A stretch of DNA of 63,136 nt, counting the filler, from Octopus bimaculoides (taxonomy: Eukaryota): the NCBI RefSeq assembly GCF_001194135.2. It is 5 parts of 5 records of this genome, joined end to end, with 100 filler letters (N's around TTAATTAATTAA, not from the genome) between each part and the next. Parts side by side here need not be neighbours in the genome. Positions count along the whole stretch, not along the records: positions 49,966 to 56,628 come from NC_068987.1; 4 more parts are not named here. One strand, written 5' to 3'. A program made the position numbers and the translations under genes. Below are positions 56,296-56,628 of this stretch, in pieces (position 1 is the stretch's first letter; each line of letters begins with the position of its first letter). The notes beneath the pieces are model-generated. The model was not told the origin of the DNA. It did no database searches and saw nothing but the letters and a program-made list of their open reading frames with translations.

Positions 56296-56628
56296 TAGCT
56301 CTTGGCTTTCGAACGAACGCACGTACGTTCAGGTCAAGAGCAACGAACGAAGTTCCGTAGCTCTTGGCTCTCGAAAGAACGCACGTACGTTCAGGCCAAG
56401 AGCAACGAACGAAGTTCCGTAGCACTTGGCTCTCGAACGAACGTACGTACGTTCAGGCCAAGAGCACCGAACGAAGTTCCGTAGCTCTTGGCTCTCGAAA
56501 GATCGTACGTACGTTCAGGCCAAGAGCAACGAACGAAGTTCCGTAGCTCTTGGCTCTCGAACGAACGTACGTACCTTCTGGCCAAGAGCAAGGAACGAAG
56601 TTCCGTAGCTCTTGGCTCTCGAACGAAC
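56296..56628 (+). repeat. 62-bp tandem array of self-complementary units, runs off the scaffold end
   Basis: Units start 56296, 56358, 56420, 56482, 56544, 56606; consensus stem GCTCTTGGC...GCCAAGAGC with inner GAACG(T/C)ACGTACGTTC. Confidence 0.95.

What the first reader, a model, noticed from the sequence alone, without database searches (positions are those of the whole stretch)
56296..56628. 62-bp tandem array in which each unit is a long stem-loop
The consensus unit has a 9-bp outer stem (GCTCTTGGC/GCCAAGAGC) around a near-perfect 16-bp palindrome (exact GAACGTACGTACGTTC at 56439-56454), then an ~18-nt linker. Transcribed, it would be a string of ~44-nt hairpins; as dsDNA, phased cruciforms. 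Single substitutions differ between units while both stems are mostly kept. It runs off the scaffold end, as a collapsed large array would. I do not recognise it as a described repeat. Possible roles (inference): small-RNA precursor array, protein-binding scaffold, or terminal subrepeats of a foldback element.
Basis: partly seen in the sequence, partly recalled or inferred. Interest (0 to 1): 0.7.

Follow-up and report, generated by a model that had tools for sequence, protein, structure and literature searches.

The report
Palindromic 62-bp tandem repeat from a microsatellite
This is a real but short run of a 62-base repeat, each copy almost its own mirror image and built from the simple AACG repeat next to it; it looks like ordinary young satellite DNA at an assembly break, with no sign that the hairpin is under selection.

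Summary
There are 5.4 head-to-tail copies of a 62-bp unit at 56294-56628, 94% alike with no indels, and they stop mid-unit at the edge of the piece. The 9-bp outer stem and the 16-bp palindrome are present, and single units fold better than shuffles (z -2.1 to -4.7).

Three things change the picture:
- The linker is a palindrome too. The whole unit is 52/62 identical to its own reverse complement, with two dyad centres of nearly equal stability. The full array folds in silico into one long foldback, not a string of hairpins.
- Of 12 substitutions, 6 fall in stems. Five of those break a pair, one gives G:T, and none is compensatory, so there is no evidence of selection on structure.
- The unit is made of local material: AACG microsatellite phases, (ACGT)3, and arms that match the far boundary of the adjoining 2.5-kb (AACG)n tract on both strands.

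No Rfam family, tRNA or CENP-B box was found, and no relative in any searchable collection or paper. None of those collections holds eukaryotic genomes or Dfam/Repbase.

Best reading: a locally born palindromic minisatellite or satellite. Small-RNA, centromeric and transposon-borne roles remain untested rivals. Interest is low.

The parts
56294..56628 (.). 62-bp tandem array, 5.4 copies. Units at 56294, 56356, 56418, 56480 and 56542, plus a partial unit at 56604-56628 cut by the end of the piece.
   Evidence: TRF period 62, 94% matches, no indels; the repeat finder family D1 with spacing 62; per-unit substitution table.
56484..56527 (.). Left arm GCTCTTGGC at 56484-56492, inner 16-bp palindrome at 56501-56516 (one mismatch in this unit), right arm GCCAAGAGC at 56519-56527.
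   Evidence: (I6, I20).
56439..56454 (.). The only exact copy of the 16-bp palindrome GAACGTACGTACGTTC. The other four full units each carry one mismatch in it.
   Evidence: (I16).
56519..56554 (.). Dyad B, the second symmetry centre, spanning the 'linker'. GCCAAGAGCAACG at 56519-56531 pairs with CGTAGCTCTTGGC at 56542-56554: 13 bp, one mismatch, 10-nt loop.
   Evidence: I14, I20, I21. The permuted consensus folds at -16.1 kcal/mol as DNA, z -4.0. The unit is 52/62 identical to its own reverse complement.
53753..56295 (+). Degenerate (AACG)n microsatellite, 2.5 kb, running without a discrete junction into the first 62-bp unit. It is the source material of about half of the unit.
   Evidence: TRF period 4, 636 copies, 68% matches. 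The unit aligns at 60-75% identity to the tract on the + strand only. Twenty nt of the unit are exact AACG phase and 12 nt are (ACGT)3.
53746..53761 (.). Left boundary motif of the AACG tract, AAGAGCTACGAAGGAA. An assembly duplicate lies at 52865-52880. It is homologous to the arms of the 62-bp unit on both strands, so the tract is bracketed by AAGAGCTACG ... CGTAGCTCTT.
   Evidence: It is the best match of the unit, on both strands, among 1158 windows of the non-AACG part of the piece. Scores are 11 and 10 against a mean of 5.5 and sd of 1.2.
52090..52860 (+). Upstream 21-bp minisatellite (TGGAAAGTTCCGAGGATTTCA) and a 38-bp repeat family. They share the core GTTCCG with the unit's linker, always on the + strand. 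They are part of the same repeat complex but are not themselves palindromic.
   Evidence: GTTCCG occurs 19 times on + and 0 times on -; self-reverse-complement scores are within the shuffle range.

Best explanation
This is a locally born tandem repeat (minisatellite or young satellite DNA) in a eukaryotic repeat complex.

Its 62-bp monomer is a double palindrome assembled from the neighbouring (AACG)n microsatellite and from the motif that bounds that microsatellite. The inferred origin is an inverted duplication (fold-back or template switch), which joined AACG-phase sequence to its complement (...CGAACGAACGTACGTACGTTC...) and placed the boundary motif AAGAGC(T)ACG in both orientations. The unit was then amplified head to tail by replication slippage or unequal exchange.

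On this reading the hairpin or cruciform potential is a by-product of how the monomer was made. The sequence gives no sign that it is a selected RNA or protein-binding structure. The contig stops inside the array because short-read assemblers break in tandem repeats.

Shown: the array, the double dyad, the composition from local material, and the lack of compensatory change. Inferred: the mechanism of origin, the amplification route, and the absence of function.
For: - Array and period.
- The unit is 52/62 identical to its own reverse complement, score 33 against shuffles of 3.8 +/- 4.2 with a maximum of 20. The neighbouring 21-bp and 38-bp repeat units are not palindromic.
- Two dyad centres have near-equal stability, -17.3 and -16.1 kcal/mol as DNA.
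- Local material: 20 nt of the unit are exact AACG phase and 12 nt are (ACGT)3. The unit aligns to the adjoining tract on the + strand only.
- The first unit follows ...AACGAACGAACG directly, with no discrete junction.
- The arms match the opposite boundary of the AACG tract on both strands, the top hit of 1158 windows.
- Twelve substitutions split 6 in stems and 6 outside; 5 of the 6 stem changes break pairs and none is compensatory.
- No Rfam family at E<=1, no tRNA, and no coding relatives for either strand of the array.
Against: - With 5.4 copies and 12 substitutions, the test for selection on structure has little power.
- Genome-wide copy number, transcription and chromosomal position are unknown. 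The array could be the edge of a megabase satellite with a structural role.
- The boundary-motif match is a 10-mer plus a 14/16 match found post hoc.
- Eight of the 12 substitutions are transversions and none is a CpG transition, although the unit has 8 CpG. That is unusual for old neutral DNA in a methylated genome. It may mean the array is very young, is unmethylated, or contains assembly errors.
Confidence: 0.6

Rival explanations
1. The array is the edge of a high-copy (peri)centromeric or subtelomeric satellite whose dyad symmetry promotes non-B-form DNA (cruciforms). That would contribute to centromere or heterochromatin identity, as proposed for dyad-rich centromeric satellites that lack CENP-B boxes.
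For: - The double dyad symmetry is strong.
- No CENP-B box is present, even with one mismatch allowed.
- The array runs off the end of the contig inside a repeat-rich region.
- Kasinathan & Henikoff 2018 (PMC5889037) link dyad-rich satellites to predicted cruciforms at centromeres.
Against: Only 335 bp are seen, and there is no information on abundance or position. Only one of five units keeps the 16-bp palindrome exact. The model in that paper concerns dyads shorter than 10 bp in satellites known to be centromeric, which was not established here.
Confidence: 0.13
2. The microsatellite and the tandem array are the internal modules of a composite non-autonomous transposon. Candidates are the Helentron-derived HINE type or tandem-repeat-containing MITEs, which have a left flank ending in a 4-nt microsatellite, then a satDNA-like array, then a right flank with a palindrome.
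For: The order of a tetranucleotide microsatellite followed by a tandem-repeat array matches the Cg_HINE layout described in PMC7492417 and DTC84 (PMC3879986). The AACG tract is bracketed by a 10-bp inverted repeat.
Against: - In HINEs the microsatellite is short, whereas here it is 2.5 kb.
- The repeat unit is made of the microsatellite itself and begins without a junction, which points to local growth rather than a carried module.
- The right flank with its 3' palindrome and subTIR lies beyond the piece.
- No second copy was found anywhere, although no eukaryotic genome could be searched.
Confidence: 0.12
3. The array is transcribed and the transcript folds back on itself into long imperfect dsRNA. 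That dsRNA would be diced into endo-siRNAs, as at tandem hpRNA loci such as Drosophila hp-CG4068.
For: The whole array folds at -166.7 kcal/mol with z -12.3 against shuffles. Tandem hpRNA clusters with fast copy-number change exist (PMC10317233).
Against: There is no evidence of transcription and no identifiable target gene. No compensatory changes were seen. Any palindromic tandem repeat gives such a fold. The local hairpins, at about 18 interrupted base pairs or fewer, are too short for canonical Drosha/Dicer miRNA processing (established knowledge). Rfam has no match.
Confidence: 0.05
4. The array is partly an assembly artefact: a real repeat whose copy number, variants or junction to the AACG tract are misassembled at a low-coverage contig end.
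For: The same piece holds an unmerged contig overlap. The 167 bp before the gap (52804-52970) recur exactly at 53685-53851 after it. The array sits at the very end of the contig. Eight of the 12 differences are transversions.
Against: Copies differ at specific positions, and two variants are shared between units (T27C in units 1-2, C21A in units 2 and 4). That is not what a pure artefact would give. The period is exact, with no indels.
Confidence: 0.07

Closest known systems
Satellite/minisatellite DNA with internal dyad symmetry (dyad-rich centromeric satellites; Kasinathan & Henikoff 2018, PMC5889037)
   Same: Head-to-tail non-coding repeats whose monomers carry inverted repeats predicted to form hairpins or cruciforms. 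No CENP-B box is present.
   Different: Here nearly the whole monomer is palindromic (52/62) with two symmetry centres. It is visibly derived from an adjoining microsatellite. Centromeric location and abundance are unknown.
Tandem-repeat-carrying non-autonomous Helentrons (Cg_HINE, PMC7492417) and tandem-repeat-containing MITEs (DTC84, PMC3879986)
   Same: A tetranucleotide microsatellite lies immediately upstream of a short satDNA-like array, and palindromes are part of the element.
   Different: The microsatellite is 2.5 kb rather than short. The repeat unit is built from the microsatellite. No subTIR/IR was identified, and the right flank is not in the piece. No other copies are known.
Tandem hairpin-RNA (hpRNA) loci such as hp-CG4068 of Drosophila (PMC10317233)
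   Same: Tandem copies with strong fold-back potential that could come from a single transcript, and copy number prone to rapid change.
   Different: Known hpRNAs have long duplex arms with homology to a target gene and documented Dicer-2-dependent siRNAs. None of this is shown here, and the local stems are only about 18 bp.
Foldback (FB) transposons (from general knowledge)
   Same: Long stretches of short tandem subrepeats with inverted-repeat character.
   Different: FB elements are defined by two long terminal inverted repeats made of subrepeats. Only one side exists in this piece, and here the palindromy lies within each unit rather than between two distant arrays.

Membership tests
Satellite / minisatellite DNA | Head-to-tail copies with a constant period and high mutual identity, non-coding | tested here: met
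   Period 62, 5.4 copies, 94% identity, no indels. ORFs are at most 66 aa and have no relatives.
Satellite / minisatellite DNA | Long arrays or high genomic copy number (for 'satellite' in the strict sense) | not testable with these tools
   The piece ends inside the array. No reads or genome of the source organism are available. Searchable collections gave only chance 19-mer hits.
Dyad-rich centromeric satellite | Dyad symmetry predicted to form non-B DNA | tested here: met
   DNA fold -17.3 and -16.1 kcal/mol for the two registers, z -4.6 and -4.0. Self-complementarity is 52/62.
Dyad-rich centromeric satellite | Centromeric location or CENP-A association | not testable with these tools
   No chromosomal or ChIP information is available.
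miRNA / pre-miRNA cluster | Hairpin of about 60-70 nt with a continuous stem of about 22 bp or more within a longer pri-miRNA stem, and a match to a known family | tested here: not met
   The local hairpin is 44-48 nt, with a 9-bp outer stem, an asymmetric internal loop, and an inner stem of 8 bp or fewer. Rfam 15 gave no match at E<=1.
Structured RNA under selection (any) | Pair-preserving (compensatory) substitutions among copies | tested here: not met
   No compensatory change. Of 6 stem substitutions, 5 break the pair and 1 gives G:T. Substitutions fall in stems and outside them in proportion to length. Power is low with 5.4 copies.
Self-cleaving ribozyme satellites (hammerhead type) | Match to a ribozyme covariance model | tested here: not met
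   No Rfam match on either strand at E<=1.
hpRNA / endo-siRNA locus | Long intramolecular duplex | tested here: met
   The whole-array MFE is a single foldback at -166.7 kcal/mol, z -12.3. This follows automatically from a palindromic unit.
hpRNA / endo-siRNA locus | Transcription, Dicer-dependent siRNAs of about 21 nt, and homology to a target gene | not testable with these tools
   No expression data are available. Translations and DNA strings found no related gene.
HINE (non-autonomous Helentron) / tandem-repeat-containing MITE | Left flank ending in a short microsatellite, followed by a satDNA-like array | tested here: inconclusive
   The order matches. However, the microsatellite is 2.5 kb and merges into the array without the variable spacer described.
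HINE (non-autonomous Helentron) / tandem-repeat-containing MITE | 5' and 3' subterminal inverted repeats, a 3' palindrome, and many dispersed copies | not testable with these tools
   The right flank lies beyond the piece, and no genome of the source organism can be searched.
Foldback (FB) element | Two long terminal inverted repeats composed of subrepeats | not testable with these tools
   Only one side is present. No long-range inverted repeat exists within the piece apart from the array itself.

The most novel reading that the evidence does not exclude
The array is the visible edge of a functional palindromic repeat. One possibility is a tandem hpRNA-type precursor whose transcript zips into long dsRNA and yields siRNAs. 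The other is a major satellite whose double-dyad monomer extrudes phased cruciforms that mark a chromosomal domain. In either case it would have been caught at the point of its birth from a microsatellite boundary.
Probability: 0.08. Interest if true: 0.55.

Novelty: new member of a known kind. Interest (0 to 1): 0.2.

Why it matters
As it stands, it matters little. Tandem repeats with internal dyads at contig ends are common in eukaryotic assemblies.

The one instructive point is that the origin can be read directly from the sequence. The monomer is stitched from the adjoining AACG microsatellite and its boundary motif in both orientations. That gives a clean small example of how a palindromic satellite monomer can arise from a microsatellite by inverted duplication. 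If the array proved to be abundant, transcribed or centromeric, that traceable origin would make it a useful case for studying how satellites are born.

Tried and rejected
- Exact-pattern scans for 19-24-nt pieces of the unit. JGI metagenome contigs gave 0 hits twice. IMG/VR gave 1 hit and the prokaryotic genomes 5 hits. All are chance 19-mers whose flanks are 19-26% identical to the unit; about 4 such hits are expected in 596 Gb.
- Translated routes. ORFs of the array on both strands found no candidate in the 5.8-billion-protein index. The full HMMER scan of 1.84 billion representatives gave one hit, P0001, an unrelated GC-rich repeat protein at 29% identity. I rejected it as a repeat-summation artefact.
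- The long minus-strand ORF of the AACG tract. It finds only other CGTT-microsatellite 'proteins' from assorted metagenomes. The best contig, L007, holds no 62-bp unit motif, and the route did not reveal the source organism.
- Literature search for six sequence strings from the 62-bp and 21-bp units: 0 papers.
- Rfam, tRNA/SINE heads and the CENP-B box: nothing found.
- Long-range inverted repeats that would mark a foldback element within the piece: none outside the array.
- Taxon. The left flank at about 50548-50730 reminded me of the 3' tail of a teleost LINE. This is from memory only and could not be tested. CpG o/e of 0.77 in the unique flank is not diagnostic.

Full report
**Observation**

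The piece (49966-56628) ends in a tandem array at 56294-56628. It has period 62, 5.4 copies, 94% matches, no indels and a TRF score of 586. The consensus is CGTAGCTCTTGGCTCTCGAACGAACGTACGTACGTTCAGGCCAAGAGCAACGAACGAAGTTC.

Each full unit folds below its dinucleotide-preserving shuffles on both strands, at -19.4 to -26.2 kcal/mol as RNA with z -2.1 to -4.7. The consensus as DNA folds at -17.3 kcal/mol, z -4.6. The last unit is cut after 25 nt by the end of the piece.

The 'linker' is itself the centre of a second dyad. GCCAAGAGCAACG pairs with the CGTAGCTCTTGGC of the next unit: 13 bp, one mismatch, 10-nt loop (I14).

Overall the 62-nt unit is 52/62 identical to its own reverse complement at a circular shift of 10. 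The score is 33, against shuffles averaging 3.8 +/- 4.2 with a maximum of 20. The neighbouring 21-bp and 38-bp repeat units show no such property.

Because the unit is roughly its own reverse complement, the whole 345-nt stretch has as its minimum-energy fold one long foldback of -166.7 kcal/mol, z -12.3. Five separate hairpins sum to -114.0 kcal/mol. 'A string of 44-nt hairpins' is therefore only one of several nearly equivalent descriptions. Local hairpins might still form first during transcription; that is an inference.

**Test for selection on the structure**

The 5.4 copies differ from the consensus at 12 positions. Six lie in the 34 stem positions and six in the 28 non-stem positions, which is proportional to length. 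Of the six stem changes, five break the pair (C-A twice, then A-A, T-T and C-C) and one gives G:T. None is compensated. Only one of five units keeps the inner palindrome exact.

The stems are 'mostly kept' only because the copies are 94% identical. The sample is small, so this shows absence of evidence rather than strong evidence of absence.

**Origin of the unit**

The array directly follows a 2.5-kb degenerate (AACG)n tract at 53753-56295. The tract runs into the first unit with no discrete junction...AACGAACGAACG|TAGCTCTTGGC.

Within the unit, 20 nt are exact AACG phase (CGAACGAACG, twice) and 12 nt are (ACGT)3. The inner palindrome is an AACG run meeting its complement CGTT. The unit aligns to the tract at 60-75% identity on the + strand only.

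The non-microsatellite part, the arms, matches the opposite boundary of the AACG tract: AAGAGCTACGAAGGAA at 52865-52880, with a duplicate at 53746-53761. The match is 14/16 on the + strand and an exact 10-mer on the - strand. These are the top scores among 1158 windows of the non-AACG part of the piece, 11 and 10 against a mean of 5.5 and sd of 1.2. The tract is therefore bracketed by AAGAGCTACG ... CGTAGCTCTT.

The simplest reading is that the monomer was assembled locally from the microsatellite and its boundary by inverted duplication, then amplified in tandem. This is an inference.

**Context**

The piece looks like a eukaryotic repeat complex.

| Coordinates | Content |
|---|---|
| 49966-51470 | Unique sequence, GC 37%, CpG o/e 0.77 |
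| 51516-52080 | GA-rich tract |
| 52090 to ~52660 | 21-bp minisatellite |
| ~52674 to ~52830, and again at 53564-53745 after the gap | 38-bp repeat family |
| 53753-56295 | (AACG)n tract |
| 56294-56628 | 62-bp array |

The core GTTCCG occurs 19 times on the + strand and never on the - strand. It is shared by the 21-bp, 38-bp and 62-bp units.

The N gap at 52971-53563 is flanked by an exact 167-bp duplication, 52804-52970 = 53685-53851. This is an unmerged contig overlap, so the assembly is unreliable here.

There are no tRNAs and no Rfam families at E<=1. The only long ORFs are microsatellite artefacts.

**Search for relatives**

- Metagenome contigs: 0 hits for two different patterns.
- Viral contigs gave 1 hit and prokaryotic genomes 5 hits, all chance 19-mers with unrelated flanks.
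- Array ORFs on either strand: no candidates.
- Full HMMER scan: one spurious hit to an unrelated repeat protein.
- The AACG-tract ORF found only other CGTT-microsatellite ORFs. The best contig lacks the unit.
- Sequence strings in 8.4 million papers: none.

None of these resources contains eukaryotic genome assemblies, Dfam or Repbase. 'Not found' therefore does not establish novelty, and the copy number in the source genome remains unknown.

**Comparison with known kinds**

- **Dyad-rich satellites.** The array behaves like satellite or minisatellite DNA with internal dyad symmetry. That class is discussed for centromeres by Kasinathan & Henikoff (PMC5889037). No CENP-B box is present, but centromeric location is untestable here.
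- **Transposon-borne arrays.** The microsatellite-then-array order resembles tandem-repeat-carrying Helentron derivatives (Cg_HINE, PMC7492417) and tandem-repeat-containing MITEs (PMC3879986). The microsatellite is far too long for those, the unit is made of it, and the diagnostic right flank is off the piece.
- **hpRNA loci.** Tandem hpRNA loci such as hp-CG4068 (PMC10317233) are a formal analogue for the small-RNA idea. There is no expression data, no target homology and no structural conservation to support it.
- **miRNA and ribozymes.** Canonical miRNA precursors and ribozyme satellites fail the tests that could be run.

**Verdict**

This is a real, strongly palindromic 62-bp tandem repeat. 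It is most likely a locally born minisatellite or young satellite whose hairpin potential is a by-product of its origin (confidence about 0.6).

It is a new member of a known kind, and the interest is low (0.2). The main open quantity is copy number. A reads-based count, a Dfam/Repbase search and small-RNA mapping would decide between the neutral reading and the more interesting rivals.

Noticed in passing
window 52804-52970 and 53685-53851, flanking the N gap 52971-53563: The last 167 bp before the gap recur exactly after it. This looks like two contig ends that overlap but were scaffolded with a gap instead of being merged, so the 38-bp repeats and the start of the AACG tract are represented twice.
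   Followed up: yes
window 53753-56295: A 2.5-kb degenerate (AACG)n tract with recurrent AAAT/AAAG/AATG variants. It has extreme strand asymmetry (A 55%, T 7%) and CpG o/e of 3.9. Its minus strand reads as long stop-free 'FVRS' ORFs of up to 324 aa. These match database 'proteins' predicted from similar microsatellites, one of them named an ABC transporter by its source, which is probably a misannotation.
   Followed up: partly
window 52090-52860 and 53564-53745: A 21-bp minisatellite (TGGAAAGTTCCGAGGATTTCA) grades into a 38-bp repeat (AGTTCCGAGGGTGGCACTTC...). Both share the core GTTCCG with the 62-bp unit, always on the + strand (19 occurrences against 0). This suggests that the three repeat families are related or grew from one another.
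   Followed up: partly
window 51516-52080: A 565-bp purine-only-strand (GA)n-rich tract with GACA/GATA interruptions lies immediately upstream of the minisatellites. It is an H-DNA-prone polypurine tract.
   Followed up: no
window 56294-56628: Among the 12 differences between units, 8 are transversions and none is a CpG-to-TpG/CpA transition, although the unit holds 8 CpG. Two variants are shared between units: T27C in units 1-2 and C21A in units 2 and 4. The array may be very young, unmethylated in the germ line, or partly affected by assembly errors.
   Followed up: partly
window ~50548-50730: This segment reminded me of the 3' tail of a fish LINE/SINE-type repeat (...GGGTCGTGGGG...). That is from memory only and was not testable with the tools at hand. 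The source organism remains unidentified.
   Followed up: no
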